The translations under genes and the position numbers were made by a program. 64,000 nucleotides of DNA, from positions 35,922-99,921 of the forward strand of contig NIVC01002120.1 in assembly GCA_002269645.1 (NCBI GenBank), given 5' to 3'. Below are positions 6,483 to 23,811 of the stretch, in pieces. This stretch comes from Macrostomum lignano (Eukaryota). Numbering within the stretch: the first letter of the stretch is position 1; the number at the start of each line of letters is the position of its first letter. The notes beneath the pieces were generated by a model, which was not told the origin of the DNA, did no database searches, and worked only from the letters and a program-made list of their open reading frames with translations.

Positions 6483-7457
6483 TCACACAAACATGCAGTG
6501 ACTAGCCCAAGTAAAGGCTTCTTGCTCTGTAAGTGCGACGCAATGAACCCCCCATCCCAAATTTGAGCGTAAAACAAAGTGTAATATCTGGCAAGAAATG
6601 TGCACGGTGATTCTTAAATATGCTCCAGGGCTATATTGGGTGCAGCAACTAAGTAAGTGCAGATTTTTTGGCTTTTTTAACTCGTTATGATCTGAAATGG
6701 CAATAAGGTACGGGTGGCATGGATAGATGACATGAAACAACATGCGCTTTGCTCCCTCCTTTACCTCCTTTGCTGCCTTTCTCTTCTGAGCTGGCCGATC
6801 AACTGGATCGCACGTGTGCGGAGCAAGGGCTTCTATGGTTCCATCAGCACGGCAGACTGCGGAGCCATGACAGTGCAGTGATAAACACTTAGTGCAGCGA
6901 TAGTACGTGTTGCCATTTCGCCGCGTTTTTGCATCCATCAGATGGCCAAGGTCTCGTTGGGCATACTGCACTAGAAGGTCTTTTCCGTGACTGCATCCTG
7001 CACCTGTAAGAATCTCAAAGGGCTGGGGAGGTGGGCTGCGGGGCAGTGCAAGCTCTGCTGGAGGAATTTGAATGGATTCTTCCAGAGCTGGATCAGGGTC
7101 ATTGAAATCTGGATACTGGTAAAGAAAATTTTCTGCTTGTGCCGGAATCAATTGCACTGGTTCTGGATTTTCAGCAGGCAGAGAAACAGCCGCTGGTCCA
7201 GAATTCGGGGCTTGTACATGTACCACTGCAGCATCTGCAGCTTGAGACACTGCTAAGTTACCTGCAGGAGCCCGTCTATTGCATTGATTGCAAAGCCAGA
7301 AAAACTCACCAACATTTCTCATTGCAGAATACTGATCGATTGTGACGCGACTATCACATGCATGGTGCTGCCAATTCAAGCATTGAGAACACTCAATTGC
7401 TTCTTGTCCATCGCAAACTGGCTGCAGACAGACCACACATGGATATGCGCCTGCCAT
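6483..7457 (-). CDS. Transposon protein: N-terminal PHD finger plus FLYWCH-like zinc finger (MULE transposase N-terminus); no DDE core seen
   Basis: CVVC..D..AIECSQCLNWQHHAC..FWLCNQC is C4HC3 with the conserved W. GKDLL..NGNTYYRCTKC..CHGSA..HTCDP resembles FLYWCH. The last ~80 aa look unrelated (truncated or spliced). Confidence 0.7.
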   Translation of the reverse strand: MAGAYPCVVCLQPVCDGQEAIECSQCLNWQHHACDSRVTIDQYSAMRNVGEFFWLCNQCNRRAPAGNLAVSQAADAAVVHVQAPNSGPAAVSLPAENPEPVQLIPAQAENFLYQYPDFNDPDPALEESIQIPPAELALPRSPPPQPFEILTGAGCSHGKDLLVQYAQRDLGHLMDAKTRRNGNTYYRCTKCLSLHCHGSAVCRADGTIEALAPHTCDPVDRPAQKRKAAKEVKEGAKRMLFHVIYPCHPYLIAISDHNELKKPKNLHLLSCCTQYSPGAYLRITVHISCQILHFVLRSNLGWGVHCVALTEQEAFTWASHCMFV

Positions 7458-13069: not shown

Positions 13070-13447
13070 ATGGGATCGAAATCCTCAAAGCTGAGTCCAG
13101 AGCAGCTGCACGACCTCGTGGAGCAGACGCAGTTCACCGAGGAGGAGCTGCAGGACTGGTACCGCGGCTTCATCAAAGACTGCCCGAATGGCGAGCTGAG
13201 CAGGCCCGAGTTCCAGAAGATCTACGCCAACTTCTTTCCCTATGGAGACGCCTCCAAGTTTGCTGACCACGTGTTCCGCACCTTCGACCGGGACGGCAAC
13301 GACCGCATCGACTTCCGCGAGTTCATCTGCGCTCTCAGCGTCACCTCCAGGGGCCGTCTGGAGCAGAAACTGTCCTGGGCCTTCTCCATGTACGACCTGG
13401 ATGGAGACGGCTTCATCAGCAGGGAGGAGATGCTGGAGATTGTGAGG
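13070..13447 (+). CDS. NCALD-like: Neurocalcin/hippocalcin-like neuronal calcium sensor, coding exon 1 (126 aa)
   Basis: MGSKSSK myristoylation motif, inactive EF1 (KDCPNG), [28 protein letters not shown]3 [12 protein letters not shown]. Donor agg|gtgagt at 13448, phase 0. Confidence 0.95.
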
Positions 13448-13497
13448 GTGAGTCGCTGCAGGATACTGGATATTATGTGAAGGGTGAGTGCTCTAGG

Positions 13498-13745
13498 GTG
13501 CTGGAGATTGTGCGGAGGGTGCTGGAGATTGTGCAGAGGGTGCTGGAAATTTGCAGAGGGTGCTGGAAATTGTGCAGAGGGTGCTGGAGATTGTGCGGAG
13601 GGTGCTGGAGATTGTGCAGAGGGTGCTGGAGATTGTGCAGAGGGTGCTGGAGATTGTGCAGAGGGTGCTGGAGATTGTGCAGAGGGTGCTGGAGATTGTG
13701 CAGAGGGTGCTGGAGATTCTGCGGAGGGTGCTGAAGATTGTGCAG
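13498..13745 (+). repeat. 21-bp intronic minisatellite (gtgctggagattgtgcagagg), ~12 copies
   Basis: Unit copies the exon-1 end atgctggagattgtgagg|gt. Confidence 0.95.
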
Positions 13746-14604
13746 GAGTACTACATAATAAACTTATTTATCTAGAGCATGGGTAGACTTACTGACTGAA
13801 GAAATTCCACACAATAATATCGTGCGCTCCGCTCATTTTATTGATTTCGCCAATCAAAGGGACAATGGAGCGGGGCGCCTATGAGCTGCAATTGCAGAGT
13901 TCCCAGGTGCGGAATCAGTGCAGTTGCTGGCCTGTGCTAGCATTGCTTGTCACAGCTGGTTTGTCTGGGCCGGCTGTTGTTCTGTTTTCCAACTCCCGGG
14001 ATTAATGGAGTCACCCGGCAAGGGAACCGGAGGCGGTCTCAGCGGAACCCAGAGCGAGCGGCTGCTGGGTGCCGGTACGGCCGGGGCAAAATGCGAAGAC
14101 ACAGGGGAAATCTCTGCGGAAATCGATAATTCTCTCCCAGGAGGCAAATACAGGACCTCTTGAACCCTTATTGATCCGGCAGGTTCCGCGGTACTCAGCG
14201 CCTCATTACAGGTCCGACACAGGCATTTTGAGCGGCATTGCGTTTTGTTTTAACGTTCCAGCAGCAGGACATGACTTCTGCCCATCCTGGGCGGATACTG
14301 TATGCAGGCACGCACATGCTCGTCGCTCATTCAGGGTGTACAGCGGCCCCCGACTGTCTAATTGTCAGGCATTTACACCCTGTGTCTTGGAGTTAACCCT
14401 CATGGCTGTGAATTTCACGACAACCCCAGGGCCACCTCCCGAACGAAAAATCCTTGCCGCACCACTTAATCATGGCACTACGAATGACGCCAATCTTGTG
14501 TGATCCGTGCTCATGTCTGCCGTTGCTGAGCTACCAACCAGATTGCATTACGATCGAGTCAATCCAACTTGCATTTATGTTTTTTTTGAAATAAAAATTC
14601 TGAT

Positions 14605-14770
14605 GAGGCATAAAAATTTAGATAGCAAAATGGGCATTCATATGCCCAAAAGACAGTAGAGTAAACGCATTTTGCAAGAAAATTTTAATGACGAGGCATA
14701 GAAATTTAGATAGCCATGCGCATTCATATGCCCAAAAGACAGTAGAGTAAACGCATTTTGCAAGAAAAAG
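14605..14770. repeat. ~86-bp tandem duplication in the neurocalcin intron
   Basis: atgcccaaaagacagtagagtaaacgcattttgcaagaaaa at 14642 and 14728. Confidence 0.9.
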
Positions 14771-14803
14771 CTGCAACTGGACAGTCACTGCCGCCGCCCG
14801 CAG

Positions 14804-14998
14804 GCCATCTACAGCATGGTTGGCATGGTGATGCGCATGCCGGAAGACGAGGCGACCCCGGAGAAGCGGACGGATAAAATATTTCGCCAAATGGACAAAG
14901 ACTTGGACGGCCGGCTGTCGATGGAGGAATTTATCGAGGGCGCCAAGTCGGATCCGAGCATTGTGAGGCTGCTGCAGTTCGATCCGAACCAGCGCTGA
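14804..14998 (+). CDS. NCALD-like: Neurocalcin/hippocalcin-like, coding exon 2 (total 190 aa)
   Basis: Acceptor cccgcag|gcc. [61 protein letters not shown] closely matches the neurocalcin C-terminus. aataaa near 15088. Confidence 0.95.
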
Positions 14999-16487
14999 CT
15001 TGGCGGTTGCTGGGGGAAGGGGATTCGGCGTGTAAAAATTAGTTTTATCAATTTCTGCTGGTGTCAGTCTTGATTGGTTCTCTGCTAATAAACTCCCTCT
15101 TAATTCCATTTTTTATGCCGTTTATATTTTGCAATCAAACCCCCCGATCGCCTACTTACGTGCTTACTGTTCAGTAGTGTAATGCAGTCTACTGTGCAAT
15201 CGATAAAAAATGTGCAAAGTGTCTCTGATTGGCTGTCGTGGCTTCCGTCAAGTCCGTACGCTTTTTTTGTGTGCCGCCGTTCAAGCAAGCCAATCAGATT
15301 AATGCTCAGCAGCTCAGATACTTTCCTGCAGTTATTATGCACTTTTTATTTTCCCACTTGTATTATTCGGTATCACGGATTGCAAATTCCATGCCTGCTG
15401 GTTGATTATTCTTTACCAATAGAATCTGAACGCAAGCCATCTGATTTTGTGTGTCCGCCTGCTGTCTTCTGTGTTGTTGACTTTGATGCCAGTCTCCGCT
15501 TTTGTGACCCCGCTTAGTGGCCGCCTCCCCTTGTCTGTGTCCTGTGTGTGTCCATCTGTGGCAGCACATTTGCGCCCTTTTCTGTTGTGCAGTCTTTGTC
15601 TACAATTGTTGCATTTCCTTGGTTATCGCTGCCCGCATGTGGGACCACTCTGATCTTCTCTCCCTTGAATCTCCCTGCCCTGATCCTCCCTCTCCTGATC
15701 CTCTCCTGATCCTCCCCTGATCCTCCCCTGATCCTGCTCTGATCCTCTCCTGATCGTCTCCTGATCCTGCTCTGATCCTCTCCTGATCCTCCCCTGATCC
15801 TCCCCTGATCCTCCCCTGATCCTGCTCTGATCCTCCCCTGATCCTGCTCTGATCCTCTCCTGATCCTCCCCTGATTCTCCCTCTCCTGATCCTCTCCTGA
15901 TCCTCCCCTGATCCTCTCCTGATTCTGCTCTAATCCTCTCCTGATCCTCTCCTGATCCTGCTCTGATCCTCTCCTGATCCTCTCCTGATCCTCCCCTGAT
16001 CCTCCCCTGATCCTGCTCTGATCCTCTCCTGATCGTCTCCTGATCCTCCCCTGATCCTCCCCTGATCCTCCCCTGATCCTGCTCTGATCCTCTCCTGATC
16101 CTCCCCTGATTCTCCCTCTCCTGATCCTCTCCTGATCCTCCCCTGATCCTCCCCTGATCCTGCTCTGATCCTCTCCTGATCGTCTCCTGATCCTCCCCTG
16201 ATCCTCTCCTGATCCTGCTCTGATCCTCTCCTGATCCTGCTCTGATCCTCTCCTGATCCCCCCTGATCCTTCCCTGATCCTGCTCTGATCCTCTCCTGAT
16301 CCTCCCCTGATCCTCCCTCTCCTGATCCTCTCCTGATCCTCTCCTGATCCTGCTCTGATCCTCTCCTGATCCTCCCCTGATCCTTCCCTGATCCTGCTCT
16401 AATCCTCTCCTGATCCTCTCCTGATCCTGCTCTTGCGGTAGAGAAGCACTCTTAACAGATAATAGTAAGACAAAACTCAATATTGTT

Positions 16488-16527
16488 TGCGACGCGTTTC
16501 GGCTGAAACTGGCCATCTTCAGGCACT
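16488..16527 (-). ncRNA. Second minimal hammerhead motif, inverted copy
   Basis: Minus strand reads agtgc-CTGAAGA-t-ggc(cagtttca)gcc-GAAA-cgcg-TC-gca. Confidence 0.7.
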
Positions 16528-16560
16528 ATCGTTAATAGGTTGAAATAAATTCTGTTCGAT

Positions 16561-16600
16561 AGTGCCTGAAGATGGCTGGTTTTGGCCGAAACGCGTCGCA
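16561..16600 (+). ncRNA. Minimal type I hammerhead ribozyme motif (Penelope-like-element type)
   Basis: tgc-CTGAAGA-t-ggct(ggtttt)ggcc-GAAA-cgcg-TC-gca: CUGANGA and GAAA boxes, stem II, palindromic stem III, GUC triplet (cut after 16597), 3-bp stem I. Confidence 0.7.
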
Positions 16601-19600
16601 AGTAGTATTGAGTTTTGTCTTACTATGATCCTGCTCTGATCCTGCTCTGATCCTCCCCTGATCCTCTCCTGATCCTGCTCTAATCCTCTCCTGATCCTCT
16701 CCTGATCCTGCTCTGATCCTCTCCTGATCCTCTCCTGATCCTGCTCTGATCCTCTCCTGATCCTCTCCTGATCCTCCCCTGATTCTCCCTCTCTTGATCC
16801 TCTCCTGATCCTGCTCTGATCCTCTCCTGATCCTCCCCTGATCCTCCCCTGATCCTCCCTCTCCTGATCCTCTCCTGATCCTCCCCTTATTCTCCCCTGA
16901 TCCCTCCTGATCCTCCTCTGATCCTCCCTGATCCTCCCCTTATCCCTCCTGATCCTCCCCTGATCCTCTCCTGATTCTCCCCTGATCCTCCCCTGATTCT
17001 CCCCTGATCCTCCCCTGATCCTCCCCTGATCCCTCCTTATCCTCCCCTGATCCCTCCTTATCCTCCCCTGATCCCTCCTTATCCTCCCCTGATCCCTCCT
17101 TATCCTCCCCTGACCCTCCTCCCTCCCTAATCGCCTTCTCGTCCTCCCTCCCCTCATTCTCCCTTTGATCCTCCCTGATCCTCTCCTCATCTCTCCCGAG
17201 CCTCCTCATCCCGTGATGATTCTCATTCCCTGAACTCTCTGATGTCCTGATCTCCCCTACTCCTTGAGTGTTTATCTTTTTTCCAGTTGTGCTGTCTGCT
17301 GTCGCTTTATAATTATTTTGATGAAATATTTATGAAAAATGCAATGCTGTTTCAGAATCGAAACTTGCAGCTGCTCTTTCCTTGGTATCTCGTGTGAGCT
17401 TAGTTTTTTAAACCCTGTGTTAAAATTTAATTATACAAATTGTGCAGAATTGTGCTGTTTTATTGCGATTACCGTGCCAGAATGGCCTGAACATGGCCTA
17501 TGAGTAGTCAGTCCTGTCTGCGTTACTTTACTTTCCTCATTTTTAATGCACATTTTTTAGAATTTGGAGCCTCAAATTATGTGCATCTTATTTGCATAAT
17601 TTTTTATACCGAGAATTTGCACTCTCCGCTGTGACCCATCTAGCTGACCAGCTGCCGCTGCCCATGAGTGCCTTTGCTATCGATTCTTCATTCGATTAGA
17701 TCAATTTTCGTATATCTGATTAGTCTCCCACTATTTTCGAGTTGAATTAATACAAGCAAGCAAAGCAATACATGTACAATCAAGAACGCAGCCTGCAACA
17801 GTTGTCATACGAGTATCGGTTGGATCAAAATCGGAGAGAATCTTGATGCGAGCGTACGAGTACATGCCGTATAATTTGATTTAACGATCGATTTTAAAAT
17901 AAAATCTACTGTGACGCAACTATTGAATTCTAACTATTATTTTTAGAAAAGTTCTAACTTAGGAACAAGATCTCGGTTTCCGAATCTAGGATTTGTGAAT
18001 TAAAGTGAAATTTTGCGAGTTTTTTTAACACGCAGTCATAAACGTTAAACAACGAAATACCAAGAACAATTAACAAGATGGTCGAAAAATTGTCGAGACT
18101 CAAAGATCTATTCTAAGATAAGATCTATAGTGAGATCTAAGTTTAGAATGGAGCTGAAGTCGATCGGCTACGCAGGTACGCGCTGGCGGGCAATCGCATA
18201 AATTGACACCGAAACAAACTTATTGCTTATTAAAATACAGCTTTTTAAAAAATTCTTTTCTTCTTGTTTCTAGTCTTAAATTGTCTAGATAATCGCGTAT
18301 TTTTGTTTTAAATTACCAGTTTCTTCCGGACCTTAGTAATGATCAAATCTAATCTAATCTAAAATTAGCTATAAGCACTGTCGGTTTCGGTTTCGCTGAT
18401 TGGCTGGCTATGCTACTAGGAGACGACGACAGGCCTTAAATGGGAGTATAGAATGAGCTATCGTGACTCAATCATTTTCTATGCGCAGAGTTTGAACTCT
18501 AGACGCAGTTGCGGCTTTAAGTGTGTCTGGACACTGAGACTGATCTGATGTCACAATCGATAATGTTCGATCCATTGTGTACTACCGTTAGTTTTTTACT
18601 TTTTTAGTTCATCTATTAATGCTAGTTAAGTTAGCTGTACGAGCGTAGTTATATTCATATTTATTCCTATCTGTAATATATAGCGTCGTTAGTTCTATGC
18701 CTAGATAAGAGGCCTAGACCTAATTGGATCATGGTATATTACAGTTGTACGCACATAGTATTTTTACCAAGTGCCAAGTGGTCGAAAACAACTATCCCCT
18801 TTCGGAATTTGGTTTTGTAGTCATTCAAAACTAATAGTCTAATATAATAATATAATTTTTATTAAGAATATATAGGCCTATTATTAATTGAAACTTAAAA
18901 TTATGGCCTATGCTATAATTTATAAACTATTCAAGCATTGATTTAGAAAATTTAAGATGGGCAACCGACATGTACTATTATTATTATTATAGTCAGAGAC
19001 TAGGCTATACTATACTATAGTATAGGCAAGGATCCAGAAAATATTGAATAGAGCCAAAGCCAGACAGAGGGATGCAGAATAGGCCTATTACTAGGGTAAA
19101 GGTAAGGTTAGGGTATATTTGTTTTTTATTCTAATTTATTTGATAATATATTACTTGGGCTAGGCCTATACTATCCAGTATACTGGCTATATTAATATAA
19201 AAAGATAAAAAACTTTAATTCAAAGAAAAAAGTAAGGCCCTACCCTTTGTCTAAATCTATTACTACAGTTCTACTATAGCTGTGGCCTGTGGATATGGCT
19301 ATAGAAAGTTAGGCCTTACAGATGGGCCTACAAAGCTTTTTTGGCAAAACAAAGTTATTTATAAATATAGGCCCCTAGTTTGCTAGTTATAGTATAGGCA
19401 GCTTGGTGGGTATTAGAAGTCTACATTTTGTCAACTAGGCCTATTCTGCACAAATCTGTGCTTAGGCCTATACTTGCCTTTTTATAGTATTTTTATAGTA
19501 ACCTAAAATTATGGCTTACCTAGGGTTGTTATAGGCCTAGTTTGTTATTATTTATATAAGTAATGAAGTGAAAGAACATATATTTTCTATAATTAGGATT

Positions 19601-21202
19601 ACATCTATTTAATATTACTCAACTAAAACTTAAAAGACCATTAGACCTATTGACTATTGATTTGTTTAATGGAAGTAGGCTAATAAGAATAAATTAATAT
19701 TACTAGTTTTAATGTAAAGAGATTTTTTAAATTCCTAGAAGTTTTCTGTCATAAGGAGAGTCCATGTACCAAACCATAGCCTTAGCCATAAGCAAAACTA
19801 TGGCTTATTCCAATTTTCTATTCCATAGCTGTAGGCCCTAGGAACCTTAATATTACTATATTCTTATAGTTCCTATAGCTGTAGCCATAGTTTTAACAAA
19901 GTCTAGAAAACAAAATATTTTTAATCAAGAAGATAAACTAGCACTTAAACAACTGCAAATTAAGTTAGAAAATTAAAGAAATACTTGATTATCTTTGTAA
20001 GATTATATTTCATCTTTTAACAATACTTAATCCATATACTAAAAATGAAATTGCTACTAAAAGTAATAATACTAAACTTTTTCACATTAATGAAAATTAG
20101 AGTTTGTTAGTGTTTTATTGTACTTTATTAGATATATTCTATAAGTTTCTAAGTTGATAATACAGTTTATTAAAGTATCTTTGTTTAACTTTACTGTTTC
20201 TAATATTTTTTCAATTTTTTAAAGTAATAACTATGGCTATGGGAATCTACAGAATGTGATAGCAATTACCATAATTCTGTAGTCGTAGCCATAAGAGCAG
20301 CTAGCTACCATAGGTATATCTATAGCTACAATAGGCACCTATTTTACCATATTTGCTCTAGGATCCTATAGCCATAGCTACGGCTACAATGGAACACTAC
20401 CCTAGAATTTGAGTCAAATAATAAAGATTTTTAATGCTATATCAATATTGAATTTGGGTAATAAAGGCAAAAGTCTAGATTAATATCTTCATTTTCAAGG
20501 GGAGCTCTTAAGTCCTTAGGGTTAGGGATTTAAATAATGGTGACTAAACATTTTATCAAATGGCAATTTGGCATTTTGTCAACTAGACATTATGGCAACT
20601 TAGCAAATTATAGCTGATTATTATAGCTGCACTAGCCAGAGAATATGAGAAATAGCATTGCAATGTCAAATTTGTTTAAAACATGTACATTTCTTAAAGC
20701 CCTATTGGAATAGAATTTCACCAAAACCCCTGAATGCCACGCAGGCATACTTCAAACGGTCACACCTATGTAGCCCTATTTGAATAAATGGCTTTGGCAT
20801 TCCTGTGCAAAAGACTAAAAAGAGAAGTTATTCAAGTGACTAGGTAAATAGCAAGAATAACTAAGACTATCTTATTAAAGCTGAATGCCTTATCATCTAA
20901 TTAGTACCTTCTCTATATTCTTTTTGGGTAGGCATTTTTGTGACTTATCCCTGGTCTACCACAATTTATGGTAGCCAAATCAATCAGGTTGGCCAGCAAT
21001 TGGCAGTTGTGCATATGTGATTTCTAGAAATTATTGATAGTAACAAATTTTATTAAGTAACAATTGTACTATATTTACATTTATAAGTAATTATGGGTAA
21101 ATTTTGGTAGCTAAGTATTTAGTGCATTAGATAAAAATAATTTATAAACAATAAAACTATTTGGCCAAGAATGTTGAATGTTAAGACTTTGAATTGGCTT
21201 CC

Positions 21203-21648
21203 TGCAACAAGACAATCTGGTGACAAACAATCCAGCAACAGTCAGCTTGGCAATAGACAATCTGGTGACCGATTTTGTAATGTAATCATATATCTGATTA
21301 TGAAACTAGTATGCAGCCCTTAGTAAAAATAAAGAAAGAAGATATCTATTTATAAATGCAGTTTCCCTTTTTTAAAGCAATATTATCATTATAAGAAAAG
21401 AAGCTATTGATCAAAATCTGTACATTTTGCACCCCCTAAATTCTAATCCTTAAAATTATTTTTGCATATATTCTAAAAAATAAATATCAATAATAATAAT
21501 TAATAACAATAATATATAATTAAAACAATCAAAACTCTCTCATCTGTTTAAATGCCAAAAAACTGAATTAAATATAACAGCCTTTTATTATACTTTGTCA
21601 CCAGATTGATTGTTGCTGGATTGTCTGTCACTAGATTATCTTGTTGCA
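21203..21648. mobile_element. MITE-like element with 38-bp inverted ends
   Basis: 21203-21240 vs reverse complement of 21611-21648: 35/38 identical. AT-rich non-coding interior; no clear TSD. Confidence 0.55.
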
Positions 21649-21816
21649 AGATTGACTAGAAACCCTTTGAATTACACACATTTCTAGTTTTCTAAATTTG
21701 CCTTTTTATTTTGTAAGTTTAGCATGGTCTATGCTCTTATGTGCATGTGCACCCACATATACATGCAGATACACTTATAAGTGTGCCTGTGCATGCACAT
21801 TTTTGCGGCACCTGCA

Positions 21817-22290
21817 CCTAAATTTCACAACGCCTAAAGCACGTGATTTCACATCACCTAAATTTCATAACGCCTAGATTTAACAACGCCTAAAATTGAA
21901 AATGCAACCTTCACAATGCCTAAATTTCACATCGCCTAAATTTCACAACGCCTAAAATTTCTGCACGCTCCTTCACATGGCCTAAATTTCATATTGCCTA
22001 AATTTCACAACGCCTAAAAATCTGCATGCTCTTTCATATCGCCTAAACTTCATATCGCCTAAATTTCACAACACCTAAAACTGAATGTGAAGGAGAGAAG
22101 CAAAGATTTTAGGCGTTGTGAAATTTAGGCGATATGAAATTTAGGCGTTGTGAAGGATGCTGCATTTTTGGTTTTAGGCATTGTGAAATTTAGGCAATAT
22201 GAAATTTAGGCGATGTGAAAGAGCGTGCAAATATTTTAGGCATTGTGAAATTTAGGCAATATGAAATTTAGGCATTGTGAAATTTAGGTC
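21817..22290. mobile_element. Foldback-like element: two opposed arrays of a ~16-bp motif (cctaaatttcacaacg)
   Basis: Forward copies ~21817-22080, reverse-complement copies (ttaggcgttgtgaaat) ~22105-22290, ~25-bp spacer. Confidence 0.65.
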
Positions 22291-23811
22291 TTATGAAAGC
22301 ATCCCCCTGCACCTACCAAATTTCTCAGGCACGCCAGATAGGCATCTGCAAAATGAAGACTTATTCCAATAGAGCTTAGTAGATTTTGTAGCAATGTTTG
22401 GTCCTCAATAGTGTTGCACCTTGGGCTTGGGGTTGCATCATGCAGCTGAACAATGCCTTGTAAACATTGGCAAGCTCCAAAATGCCTTGTTTGCTGAAAG
22501 GGTGTCAATGATGATAATGACAGATTGGACTGTGACAGCTATAGGAAATGGTTTCACCATGCCTTCAACATTGGTGCAATATTTTAGACATTCCTTTAAA
22601 TATTAACATGCTTAGGCACAACCTAGGGATTCACCCAGCCATTTCTATTGGCAACACACATATGTAAGTTGCTATTGGACAGAATAGTAGTCATGTAACT
22701 GCTCTCAGCCAATAGTGACTTACATGTGTAGGTTGCCAATAGAAATGGTTGAGTGATTTCTAAGCTTGCACATGTATGAATATTAAATAAGTGATATATG
22801 CAGGAAGGTGCACTAAATCTAAAAGATAAGTAATTATAATTGTACATATTGATTTTATTAGTCATTCAGTGCAGATGAATAGCTAATAGGCTTAACATGA
22901 CAAATGAATAATTTTGGCTTGAACCAAATGTCCAGTTGCAATAATGTTTAGTCTGGTTGACAAAGTACTAGTTAATAAAATGCCAATTGACAAAATATCC
23001 TGGAAGCTAAACAACAGAGTTTTTATATCATATGCATATTTTTGTTGGGTAGTGAAGAAAGTTAGGATTGTTTTTTAAGGGAAACTTTTAGTCTCTAACT
23101 ACTACTTATAACTACTACTTAACTCTAACTTAACTCCATATTAAAGTAGTCTTGAAAAAGTCCCAAAGTTAATTAAATATACTGACTTATTAATATTAAT
23201 AAATCCAATGTATCCTTATAATATGACCCTAGCCTAGGGACCTAGGTAGATAAATAGTTAAAATGTCAGTGCAAGCTTGTTTAAGCAATAATGAGATAAT
23301 AATAATTTAAAGCAATAAGAATATGGAATTAAAGGTCAATATTAAGACATACAAAATATAATCAAATCATTGTATATAGGTTAGGGAATATTAACTATAC
23401 ACAAATAAAACTAAGTATAAATCATAATCAGAAAAATTATTTAATCTAATTAATAGATATTTTAGTTTAAGTTGATTGTACAAATCATTACAGCATATAT
23501 AAGAGAGTTCTTTGAAATCCATGTACAAGATTAGAAACCACCCTTGTTATATTCAACTCTGCTCTTTACTGAATGCTTTTCTAATAGCTTGATTTAAATT
23601 TAATTAACCCAAACCCTTCAAAACAATTCTTTTATTTGACAAATGACAAATGACAAATTTCAAAAATTGTATTAAAAATGACATTCAATATTGCATATTG
23701 TTGTTTAATAGAACAACTATTTTGTATAAAAAAATCATTAGAAAATGAAACTATTTCCATTGAATAAGGTTTGGCCAATAACCTTTATGTAGGCATTCCA
23801 TCGTGAATAGC

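What the first reader, a model, noticed from the sequence alone, without database searches (positions are those of the whole stretch)
16462..16626. Head-to-head pair of Penelope-type hammerhead ribozymes forming one palindrome inside a satellite
Seen: arms 16462-16531 and 16557-16626 with a 25-nt loop. Each arm carries a full minimal core (CUGAAGA-U-stem II-GAAA-CGCG-UC), one per strand, 5' ends facing the centre; predicted cuts after 16597 (+) and 16491 (-). The ~190-bp unit interrupts the CTGAT satellite ~1.5 kb past the neurocalcin stop, with no RT or GIY-YIG ORF nearby. Known: such minimal hammerheads with palindromic stem III occur in Penelope-like element terminal repeats and cleave as dimers. 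Inference: any transcript carries one ribozyme plus its own antisense made first, i.e. a self-masked ribozyme or non-autonomous retrozyme-like unit that could switch between cleavage and long dsRNA.
Basis: partly seen in the sequence, partly recalled or inferred. Interest (0 to 1): 0.8.

Follow-up and report, generated by a model that had tools for sequence, protein, structure and literature searches.

The report
Truncated Penelope retroelement pair with hammerheads
The palindrome is real and each arm carries a minimal hammerhead ribozyme motif, but it is the ordinary scar of a Penelope-like retrotransposon insertion: two very short, 5'-truncated copies lying head-to-head inside a minisatellite, not a new ribozyme switch.

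Summary
Two 70-nt arms (16462-16531 and 16557-16626) flank a 25-nt spacer. Each arm has an intact minimal hammerhead core on its own strand, with predicted cuts after 16597 (+) and 16491 (-). The 193-bp insert (16434-16626) interrupts an 11-bp-unit minisatellite about 1.4 kb past the neurocalcin stop.

The motif has the published hallmarks of Penelope-like element (PLE) hammerheads. A pattern scan found at least 120 such motifs in public contigs, several next to RT + GIY-YIG ORFs.

In those loci, 37 of 101 hammerheads have an inverted copy just upstream and 1 of 95 has one downstream. Head-to-head is therefore the normal PLE insertion form. The literature describes the same features: heavy 5' truncation, an adjacent inverted truncated copy, a 30-40 bp tail at one end, and microsatellite targets. 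Here the one-sided extension is 28 nt. The missing RT/EN ORF is expected.

Either transcript is predicted to fold into a long hairpin (-130 and -112 kcal/mol), against about -5 kcal/mol for the ribozyme fold. Cleavage at this locus is therefore unlikely.

One oddity remains: all 7 differences between the arms are G:T on the + strand.

Verdict: a new member of a known kind, of low interest.

The parts
15689..17118 (.). Host minisatellite, 11-bp unit CCTCTCCTGAT, about 128 copies. It is the insertion target and continues in the same orientation on both sides of the insert.
   Evidence: TRF; unit parsing; sequence.
16423..16433 (+). Left flanking unit GATCCTGCTCT, a candidate copy of a target-site duplication.
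   Evidence: Of the 20 units of this type in the array, adjacent pairs occur only at the insertion: one on the left and two on the right. The TSD reading is an inference.
16434..16461 (-). 28-nt unique extension (TGCGGTAGAGAAGCACTCTTAACAGATA on +) beyond the 3' end of the - strand copy, absent from the + copy. It is a candidate PLE 'tail'.
   Evidence: Sequence. Unique in the window. PLE tails of 30-40 bp at only one end are described in PMC8557442 and explained by two RT start sites in PMC11167929.
16462..16531 (-). Left arm: a 5'-truncated copy of a PLE 3' end, read on the - strand. The min-HHR spans 16531 down to 16478: CUGAAGA from 16522, extra U, helix II GGC/GCC (3 bp), GAAA, CGCG, U, and C17 at 16491. 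The predicted cut is between 16491 and 16490.
   Evidence: 37.0 bits, E 1.3e-9.
16532..16556 (.). 25-nt spacer TTAATAGGTTGAAATAAATTCTGTT between the 5'-truncated ends. It is either the extra 5' sequence of one copy or junction filler, and it contains an AATAAA at 16544.
   Evidence: unique in the window.
16557..16626 (+). Right arm: a 5'-truncated copy of a PLE 3' end on the + strand. The min-HHR spans 16557-16610: CUGAAGA at 16566, extra U, helix II GGCUG/UGGCC (5 bp, two G.U) with a GUUU loop, GAAA, CGCG, U, and C17 at 16597. The predicted cut is after 16597. A further 29 nt follow to the end of the copy.
   Evidence: the only strict-descriptor hit; 41.3 bits, E 4.8e-11.
16627..16648 (+). 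Two consecutive GATCCTGCTCT units immediately right of the insert, a candidate target-site duplication.

Best explanation
This is a dead-on-arrival insertion of a Penelope-like retroelement (PLE) into an 11-bp minisatellite downstream of the neurocalcin gene.

PLE integration primes reverse transcription near the 3' end of the element RNA. It often produces a second, inverted, 5'-truncated copy next to the first. Here both copies stopped after about 70 nt, 9 nt upstream of the hammerhead's CUGAAGA box. All that remains is two head-to-head copies of the element's last 70 nt, and each contains the element's minimal hammerhead ribozyme. One copy also carries the 28-nt 'tail' that PLEs leave at one end only.

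In an active PLE the hammerheads belong to the element's own RNA biology, where they pair as dimers through the palindromic ACGCGU stem III. At this locus they have no partner in direct orientation. Any transcript through the locus should fold into a 70-bp hairpin instead of the ribozyme. The locus is therefore most likely inert, apart from possibly yielding dsRNA.

What is shown: the anatomy, the membership of the ribozyme motif, and the generality of the head-to-head layout. What is inferred: formation in a single event, the target-site duplication, and the lack of cleavage.
For: (1) The motif shows the four non-descriptor hallmarks of metazoan PLE hammerheads listed in PMC4209133. [quoted passage not shown]

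(2) The same core pattern, CUGANGA-N-GGC..GCC-GAAACGCGUC, occurs in at least 120 metagenome contigs and in MAG contigs. In L122 it lies about 200 nt after each of two ORFs carrying RVT_1 + GIY-YIG. In L059 it follows a GIY-YIG ORF.

(3) Helices I and II covary in 27 of these sequences. A covariance model built from them picks out only the two arms in the window.

(4) Head-to-head is the rule. 37 of 101 sites have an inverted copy within 800 nt upstream, against 1 of 95 downstream. In 15 of 40 pairs the inner end lies within -20 to +12 nt of CUGA, as it does here at 9 nt.

(5) The literature describes high 5' truncation, an adjacent inverted 5'-truncated copy, a 30-40 bp tail at one end, a microsatellite bias, and the HHR near the 3' end (PMC8557442). 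The PLE protein cleaves and extends both DNA strands, and RT starts at two internal sites that define the tail (PMC11167929).

(6) The insert sits at a unit boundary of the satellite, with GATCCTGCTCT units duplicated around it.

(7) There is no RT/EN remnant in the 64 kb and no other copy of the arm, tail or spacer.
Against: - No full-length PLE of this family, nor any other copy, could be examined, because the source genome is not available. The family assignment therefore rests on the ribozyme motif and the insertion architecture alone.
- The covariance-model training set was retrieved with a pattern taken from the window's own core, so the high scores are partly circular.
- The tail is 28 nt, slightly below the published 30-40 bp.
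- The arms end 29 nt after the cut site, against about 50-78 nt in the other families.
- Simple neutral decay of two independent copies does not predict that all 7 arm differences are G:T on the + strand. The background in 42 other pairs is 196 G:T, 190 A:C and 363 transversions.
Confidence: 0.85

Rival explanations
1. The 193-bp hairpin is itself a mobile non-autonomous unit. In this reading, a read-through + strand transcript of an older head-to-head PLE remnant was A-to-I edited as dsRNA. A PLE reverse transcriptase then copied it as a whole, starting in the sense arm, and so fixed A-to-G changes in both arms.
For: All 7 arm differences are G:T on the + strand, so the + RNA stem is fully paired. 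Read as A-to-G, all 7 sites have a 5' U (5 sites) or a 5' A (2 sites), the ADAR-preferred neighbours by established knowledge (hypergeometric p = 0.04). A single mutation type on one strand is more economical than a mix of C-to-U and G-to-A changes in two independent copies.
Against: There is only one copy in 64 kb. The same data also fit C-to-T changes on the + strand, 4 of 7 of them at CpG. The pattern was noticed post hoc. A second inverted repeat in the window shows a 6:0 skew the other way, so such skews may be common here. The look for unit-wise mobility in other loci found only orthologous or allelic copies. Reverse transcription through a 70-bp perfect hairpin is unfavourable.
Confidence: 0.08
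2. The palindrome would be an exapted regulatory device in the neurocalcin 3' region. It would work either as a ribozyme that toggles between self-cleavage and a long dsRNA, or as a hairpin-RNA/siRNA precursor maintained by selection on the + strand.
For: It lies 1.4 kb downstream of a + strand gene. The wobble-only differences keep the + strand hairpin, and the helix II of the + ribozyme, fully paired. Penelope inverted repeats are documented sources of siRNAs (PMC3681739).
Against: The hairpin outcompetes the ribozyme fold by more than 100 kcal/mol, so no toggling is expected. PLE min-HHRs cleave poorly even as dimers (PMC4209133), and HHR cleavage was not needed for PLE insertion in vitro (PMC11167929). 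An AATAAA 90 nt past the stop codon suggests that the mRNA may end well before the element. The Rfam miRNA hits are generic hairpin matches far below the gathering scores. No conservation data are available.
Confidence: 0.04
3. It is a foldback or MITE-type DNA transposon, or a chance palindrome, that only resembles a hammerhead.
For: It has 70-nt terminal inverted repeats with a short loop. Other foldback-like repeats exist in the window at 21.8-22.8 kb.
Against: A full hammerhead core with all PLE-specific hallmarks on both arms is not expected by chance: there were 0 hits in 200 shuffles and the model gives E about 1e-9 to 1e-11. The 28-nt one-sided extension breaks TIR symmetry but fits a PLE tail. 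There is no similarity to the other foldbacks in the window.
Confidence: 0.02

Closest known systems
Minimal hammerhead ribozymes of Penelope-like elements (Cervera & de la Pena 2014, PMC4209133; dimer cleavage by Lunse et al. 2017, as cited in PMC6765202)
   Same: The same features are present: CUGANGA / GAAA / UH boxes, an extra nucleotide after A9, a G10.1-C11.1 pair, essentially no stem III apart from a palindromic ACGCGU suited to dimerisation, type I topology, and a short helix I. The motif occurs mostly as solitary copies away from any ORF, and opposite-strand pairs were already noted in Schistosoma.
   Different: Helix I is only 3 bp, followed by a 1 x 5 internal loop and 5 further bp. 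Helix II is 5 bp in the + arm and 3 bp in the - arm, at or below the low end of the 6-8 bp described. Activity is untested.
PLE insertion architecture: an inverted 5'-truncated copy plus a one-sided 30-40 bp tail (Craig et al. 2021, PMC8557442; Frangieh et al. 2024, PMC11167929)
   Same: Head-to-head orientation with the 5' ends facing the centre, an extension on one side only, a microsatellite target, and the HHR close to the 3' end.
   Different: This is an extreme miniature. Both copies are only 70 nt and the spacer is 25 nt; the other pairs I measured have arms of 63-350 nt. The tail is 28 nt.
Penelope inverted repeats as dsRNA/siRNA sources (Evgen'ev 2013, PMC3681739)
   Same: An inverted PLE duplication that would give a perfect long hairpin RNA if transcribed.
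   Different: Those repeats are long rearranged Penelope bodies in Drosophila with measured siRNAs. No expression data exist for this locus.
Metazoan non-LTR retrozymes (Cervera & de la Pena 2020, PMC7229834; PLE origin proposed in bioRxiv 10.64898/2026.07.22.740005)
   Same: A short non-coding unit with a type I hammerhead that is related to PLE terminal repeats.
   Different: Retrozymes are direct tandem repeats of 150-450 bp with canonical hammerheads showing loop-loop contacts, and they make circRNAs. This locus is a single inverted pair of minimal hammerheads and cannot release a unit-length RNA between two same-strand cuts.
Twin priming of LINE-1 (from my own knowledge: Ostertag & Kazazian 2001)
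   Same: Both target strands prime reverse transcription, which yields an inverted junction inside one insertion.
   Different: L1 twin priming inverts different parts of a single RNA. The PLE case duplicates the same 3' end in both orientations.

Membership tests
PLE-type minimal hammerhead ribozyme | Conserved catalytic boxes C3-U4-G5-A6-N7-G8-A9, G12-A13-A14, and A15.1...U16.1-H17 | tested here: met
   Both arms read CUGAAGA ... GAAA-CGCG-UC with no core substitution.
PLE-type minimal hammerhead ribozyme | [quoted passage not shown] | tested here: met
   CUGAAGA-U-GGC...GCC-GAAA in both arms. The same feature is present in nearly all of the 115 retrieved motifs.
PLE-type minimal hammerhead ribozyme | No stable stem III; positions 15.2-16.2 and loop 3 are palindromic, allowing a dimeric stem III | tested here: met
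   ACGCGU is self-complementary, and the predicted 6-bp intermolecular duplex is -8.9 kcal/mol.
PLE-type minimal hammerhead ribozyme | Helix II of several bp closed by a loop, and a short helix I adjacent to the core | tested here: inconclusive
   In the + arm, helix II has 5 bp (two G.U) with a GUUU loop. In the - arm it has only 3 bp because of C.A and A.C mismatches. Helix I has 3 contiguous bp in both arms, with 5 further bp after an internal loop.
PLE-type minimal hammerhead ribozyme | Self-cleavage as a dimer | not testable with these tools
   This needs in vitro transcription. Thermodynamics predicts a weak ribozyme fold (-5.0 and -3.8 kcal/mol) compared with the alternative folds.
Penelope-like element insertion | ORF encoding RT plus a GIY-YIG endonuclease | tested here: not met
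   There are no Pfam RT/GIY-YIG hits in the neighbouring ORFs. tblastn with PLE ORFs gives nothing better than E = 0.28 across the 64 kb. This is expected for a 5'-truncated copy, so the locus is a PLE fragment and not an element.
Penelope-like element insertion | 5' truncation with an adjacent inverted 5'-truncated copy (head-to-head) | tested here: met
   The two arms have their 5' ends facing the centre. The same layout occurs at 37 of 101 other PLE hammerhead sites, against 1 of 95 for tail-to-tail. See also PMC8557442.
Penelope-like element insertion | A 30-40 bp tail at one end only | tested here: met
   There is a 28-nt extension at 16434-16461 on the - copy only. It is slightly shorter than published, and its boundary is ambiguous by 4 nt or less.
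Penelope-like element insertion | Insertion into simple repeats or microsatellites | tested here: met
   The insert lies at a unit boundary of an 11-bp minisatellite. The bias is described in PMC8557442.
Penelope-like element insertion | Related full-length or other truncated copies in the same genome | not testable with these tools
   Only 64 kb of the genome is available, and it holds no other copy. The family-specific pattern is absent from the viral contigs and from the 124 fetched loci.
Rfam hammerhead families (types I, II, III, HH9, HH10) | A score at or above the gathering threshold of an Rfam hammerhead model | tested here: not met
   There is no hammerhead hit even at E <= 10. The control locus L064, with two PLE hammerheads, is also missed, so the models do not cover stem-III-less variants.
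Metazoan non-LTR retrozyme | Direct tandem repeats of 150-450 bp, each with a canonical type I hammerhead | tested here: not met
   There are only two copies, in inverted orientation, and no direct repeat of the unit. The hammerhead is of the minimal type.
miRNA precursor families (mir-2513, MIR6440 and others) | Rfam gathering score | tested here: not met
   The best hit is 68.7 bits against a gathering score of 89, and the others are much lower. The matches come from the generic long hairpin.

The most novel reading that the evidence does not exclude
The strictly one-stranded G:T pattern (7 of 7) may record an RNA-level or single-strand event on the whole hairpin. One possibility is A-to-I hyper-editing of a + strand hairpin transcript that was then reverse transcribed as a unit. 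Another is deamination of a continuous nascent + strand made by snap-back synthesis. Either would mean that head-to-head PLE stubs can be copied or made as single-strand hairpins. That would inform the unresolved mechanism by which PLEs generate inverted copies.
Probability: 0.1. Interest if true: 0.5.

Novelty: new member of a known kind. Interest (0 to 1): 0.18.

Why it matters
It matters little for biology at large. It is one more solitary PLE fragment, in an animal genome that has no close relative in the databases.

It is useful as an annotation lesson: a 'paired ribozyme palindrome' with no ORF nearby is the expected footprint of PLE integration.

Two by-products may interest specialists in PLEs. 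First, in public contigs about 37% of PLE hammerhead sites carry an upstream inverted copy. The inner end of that copy often falls just 5' of the ribozyme, in 15 of 40 pairs. Second, this locus has a strand-specific wobble-only mismatch pattern. If that pattern recurs in the source genome, it could bear on how the inverted copies are made.

Tried and rejected
- Rfam at gathering and at E <= 10, on the region and on one isolated arm. There was no hammerhead hit. I rejected this as evidence because the control locus L064 is also missed.
- Rfam miRNA hits. These are generic hairpin matches below the gathering scores and were rejected.
- Other copies in the window of the arm, core, 3' end, tail and spacer with up to 3 mismatches, and with a covariance model with filters off. 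None were found.
- A family-specific pattern in the viral contigs and in the fetched loci. None were found.
- RT/GIY-YIG remnants by Pfam and by tblastn. None were found.
- Organism identification through the diacylglycerol kinase exon. The best hits are only about 50% identical, across many animal phyla, so the host lineage stays unknown.
- A general per-locus strand bias in PLE head-to-head pairs. The first, short alignments hinted at overdispersion. Longer alignments of 42 distinct pairs showed none (P = 0.83), so the idea was rejected as a general property.
- Mobility of head-to-head units as units. The pairs with matching geometry are homologous over their whole length (L031/L104, L035/L116) or well beyond the arms (L064/L119), so they are orthologous, allelic or duplicated loci and not transposed units. 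This was uninformative.
- An assembly foldback artefact. I rejected this because the arms differ at 10% of positions, the flanking satellite keeps one orientation, and only 70 nt is duplicated.
- Four GC-rich bacterial pattern matches (L028, L049, L121, L124) and a methylase-linked hammerhead (L075/L076) were set aside as not PLE.
Full report
**What is in the sequence**

The window holds an 11-bp-unit minisatellite (consensus CCTCTCCTGAT) from 15689 to 17118. A 193-bp stretch of unique sequence, 16434-16626, interrupts it.

Inside that stretch repeat finder reports one inverted repeat. Its arms are 16458-16531 and 16557-16630, 74 nt, 89% complementary, with 25 nt between them.

Read 5' to 3' on its own strand, each arm is CGAUAGUGC-CUGAAGA-U-GGC(8 nt)GCC-GAAA-CGCG-UC|GCA(5 nt)UAUUGAGUUUUGUCUUACUAU. 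On the + strand CUGA starts at 16566 and C17 is at 16597. The mirrored C17 on the - strand is at 16491.

The left side has a further 28 unique nucleotides (16434-16461) with no counterpart on the right. On the right, the arm abuts the satellite directly.

The last coding exon of the neurocalcin gene ends with a stop at 14996-14998, so the insert starts 1436 nt downstream. An AATAAA lies at 15087.

**Is it more than chance?**

I wrote a strict descriptor for a minimal hammerhead. It requires:
- the catalytic boxes;
- an optional extra nucleotide after A9;
- a G10.1-C11.1 pair;
- a helix II of at least 4 bp;
- a palindromic stem III insert;
- a helix I of at least 3 bp.

It hits once in the 64 kb on both strands (the + arm) and never in 200 dinucleotide-preserving shuffles. 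The - arm fails only because its helix II has 3 bp.

No other copy of the arm, the core, the 3' end, the tail or the spacer exists in the window.

**What kind of hammerhead is it?**

Cervera and de la Pena (PMC4209133) list four features of metazoan Penelope-like-element hammerheads that were not part of their search descriptor:
- genome-specific consensus families full of covariation;
- a G10.1-C11.1 pair;
- palindromic 15.2-16.2 and loop 3.

Both arms show the last three (U; G-C; ACGCGU).

I scanned public metagenome contigs for CTGANGANGGC-N(4-12)-GCCGAAACGCGTC. A scan of the prokaryote genome collection returned four MAG contigs.

Most of the hits have complementary sequence on either side of the core, for example CUCC...GGAG.

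In L122 the motif lies about 200 nt after each of two tandem ORFs that carry RVT_1 and GIY-YIG domains. In L059 it follows a GIY-YIG ORF. The pattern therefore marks genuine PLEs.

In an alignment of 27 diverse motifs, helices I and II are 89% paired. They show 37 double-sided changes, against 11 expected from shuffles and 2-14 for slid registers. The sequences were pre-filtered for 3 bp of helix I, so part of this is by construction.

A covariance model from that alignment scores the + arm 41.3 bits (E 4.8e-11) and the - arm 37.0 bits (E 1.3e-9). The next hit in the window scores 11.9 bits. This is partly circular, because the training set was retrieved with the window's own core pattern. The independent information is that such motifs exist in large numbers and sit in PLEs.

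Rfam finds no hammerhead at any threshold. It also misses the two PLE hammerheads of control locus L064. The negative therefore only shows that Rfam's models do not cover variants without stem III.

**Why two copies face each other, and why there is no ORF**

The literature answers this directly. [quoted passage not shown] The elements favour microsatellite targets, and the hammerhead lies near the 3' end (Craig et al. 2021, PMC8557442).

[quoted passage not shown] It starts reverse transcription at two adjacent internal sites, and the interval between them is the tail (Frangieh et al. 2024, PMC11167929).

I tested the generality of this layout on the retrieved loci:
- Of 101 distinct hammerhead sites with at least 300 nt of upstream sequence, 37 have an inverted copy of the hammerhead segment within 800 nt upstream.
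- Of 95 sites with downstream sequence, 1 has an inverted copy downstream.
- In 40 pairs aligned in full, the inner end of the repeat lies within -20 to +12 nt of the CUGA box in 15 (11 of them at 1-10 nt). Here it lies at 9 nt.
- In those pairs the outer end usually lies 50-78 nt past the cut site. Here it lies at 29 nt, or 57 nt with the tail.

The window locus is therefore a very short example of the standard structure: tail (28 nt), - copy (70 nt), spacer (25 nt), + copy (70 nt).

The satellite gives a hint of a target-site duplication. GATCCTGCTCT units, 20 in the array, are never adjacent to each other except at the insertion, where one lies on the left and two on the right. This is suggestive and not decisive.

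Pfam on the neighbouring ORFs and tblastn with PLE ORFs against the whole window confirm that there is no RT or endonuclease remnant. That is what extreme 5' truncation predicts.

**How it most likely behaves**

The + strand RNA of 16434-16640 is predicted to fold into an uninterrupted hairpin of -130.4 kcal/mol. The - strand RNA folds into a hairpin with internal loops, at -111.8 kcal/mol.

The hammerhead fold of an isolated arm is worth only -5.0 kcal/mol (+) or -3.8 kcal/mol (-). The unconstrained minimum-energy folds are -13.1 and -9.4. A dimeric stem III would add about -8.9 kcal/mol.

PLE minimal hammerheads cleave poorly in vitro even as dimers. Hammerhead mutants did not affect PLE insertion in vitro.

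I therefore infer that neither ribozyme cleaves in a transcript that contains both arms. The only plausible RNA-level consequence of the locus is a dsRNA hairpin. This too has precedent: siRNAs in Penelope-transformed D. melanogaster map precisely to inverted Penelope regions (PMC3681739). Whether the locus is transcribed at all is unknown.

**The one thing that does not fit**

All 7 differences between the arms are G:T or T:G on the + strand. The pairs are 16577/16511, 16578/16510, 16583/16505, 16584/16504, 16602/16486, 16603/16485 and 16605/16483.

As a result, the + RNA stem is fully paired with 7 wobbles, and the + ribozyme keeps a 5-bp helix II. The - RNA has C.A mismatches, and the - ribozyme loses two helix II pairs.

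In 42 other PLE head-to-head pairs the mismatches are 196 G:T-type, 190 A:C-type and 363 transversions. They show no per-locus overdispersion (P = 0.83). Against that background, 7 of 7 has a probability of order 1e-4. That figure is weakened by three things: the background comes from other genomes, the pattern was noticed post hoc, and adjacent sites may not be independent.

The pattern equals either seven A-to-G or seven C-to-T changes on the + strand:
- Read as A-to-G, all seven sites have a 5' U or A (p = 0.04), as ADAR prefers (established knowledge).
- Read as C-to-T, four of the seven are CpG (p = 0.27).

Both ancestral states would give a perfect 5-bp helix II with a GUUU loop.

A second long inverted repeat in the window (21910-22019 / 22172-22281) shows 6 A:C, 0 G:T and 2 transversions. 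Strong skews may therefore not be rare in this genome.

Without an outgroup copy I cannot choose between chance, strand-asymmetric mutation, editing followed by retro-copying of the whole hairpin, or selection on a + strand hairpin. I carry the editing or single-strand reading as the novel case, at about 10%.

**Comparison and verdict**

By motif, the ribozymes belong to the PLE minimal hammerhead class. Activity is untested, and the - arm's helix II is degraded.

By architecture, the locus is a PLE insertion fragment. It is not a PLE, because the ORF test is not met. It is not a retrozyme, because retrozymes are direct tandem repeats with canonical hammerheads (PMC7229834).

Opposite-strand hammerhead pairs 100-700 bp apart were already described in 2014.

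The proposed special function is not needed and is not supported. This is a new member of a known kind, and its interest is low.

Noticed in passing
window 16483-16486, 16504-16511, 16577-16584, 16602-16605: All 7 mismatches between the two arms are G:T on the + strand, with no A:C and no transversion. The + RNA hairpin and the + ribozyme's helix II stay fully paired, and the - strand versions do not. The background in 42 other PLE pairs is balanced and rich in transversions. Read as A-to-G, the sites have ADAR-like 5' neighbours (p = 0.04).
   Followed up: partly
window 16423-16433 and 16627-16648: GATCCTGCTCT satellite units flank the insert, one on the left and two on the right. They are never adjacent elsewhere among the 108 units of the array, which suggests a target-site duplication of about 11 bp.
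   Followed up: partly
loci L001-L120 (metagenome contigs): 37 of 101 PLE hammerhead sites have an inverted copy within 800 nt upstream, against 1 of 95 downstream. In 15 of 40 pairs the shorter copy ends within -20 to +12 nt of the CUGA box, which suggests a preferred stop just 5' of the ribozyme during cDNA synthesis.
   Followed up: partly
window 21840-22300 (also 21200-21651 and 22619-22768): A cluster of foldback-type inverted repeats built from subrepeats of about 16 nt (TTCACAACGCCTAAAT), in an AT-rich intergenic stretch. The longest arms are 110 nt at 93% identity. Their mismatches are 6 A:C, 0 G:T and 2 transversions on the + strand, the opposite skew to the hammerhead palindrome.
   Followed up: partly
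window 6483-7457 (-): An intronless 324-aa ORF with weak, sub-threshold PHD-finger and FLYWCH zinc-finger hits. It may be a transposon-derived or domesticated gene.
   Followed up: no
window, whole (exons at 13070-14998, about 23.8-27.4 kb, and about 30-58 kb): The gene content is neurocalcin, a diacylglycerol kinase and a very large cadherin, all on the + strand. Exons reach 60-72% GC and spacers about 30%, and almost every intron is filled with minisatellites. The kinase is only about 50% identical to any database protein across animal phyla, so the host lineage is poorly sampled.
   Followed up: partly
window 16544-16549: The 25-nt spacer of the palindrome contains an AATAAA polyadenylation-signal hexamer on the + strand. 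Another lies 90 nt after the neurocalcin stop, at 15087.
   Followed up: no
L064 492-573; L075 and L076: L064 has a tRNA-like match (29.6 bits, at the gathering score) about 170 nt outside a PLE head-to-head pair. L075/L076 carry a compact hammerhead (GGGA-CUGAUGAU-GGCCGAAAGGCC-GAAACGCGUC-UCCC) about 590 nt from an N6/N4 DNA methylase ORF. That one is probably a bacterial or phage hammerhead and not a PLE one.
   Followed up: no
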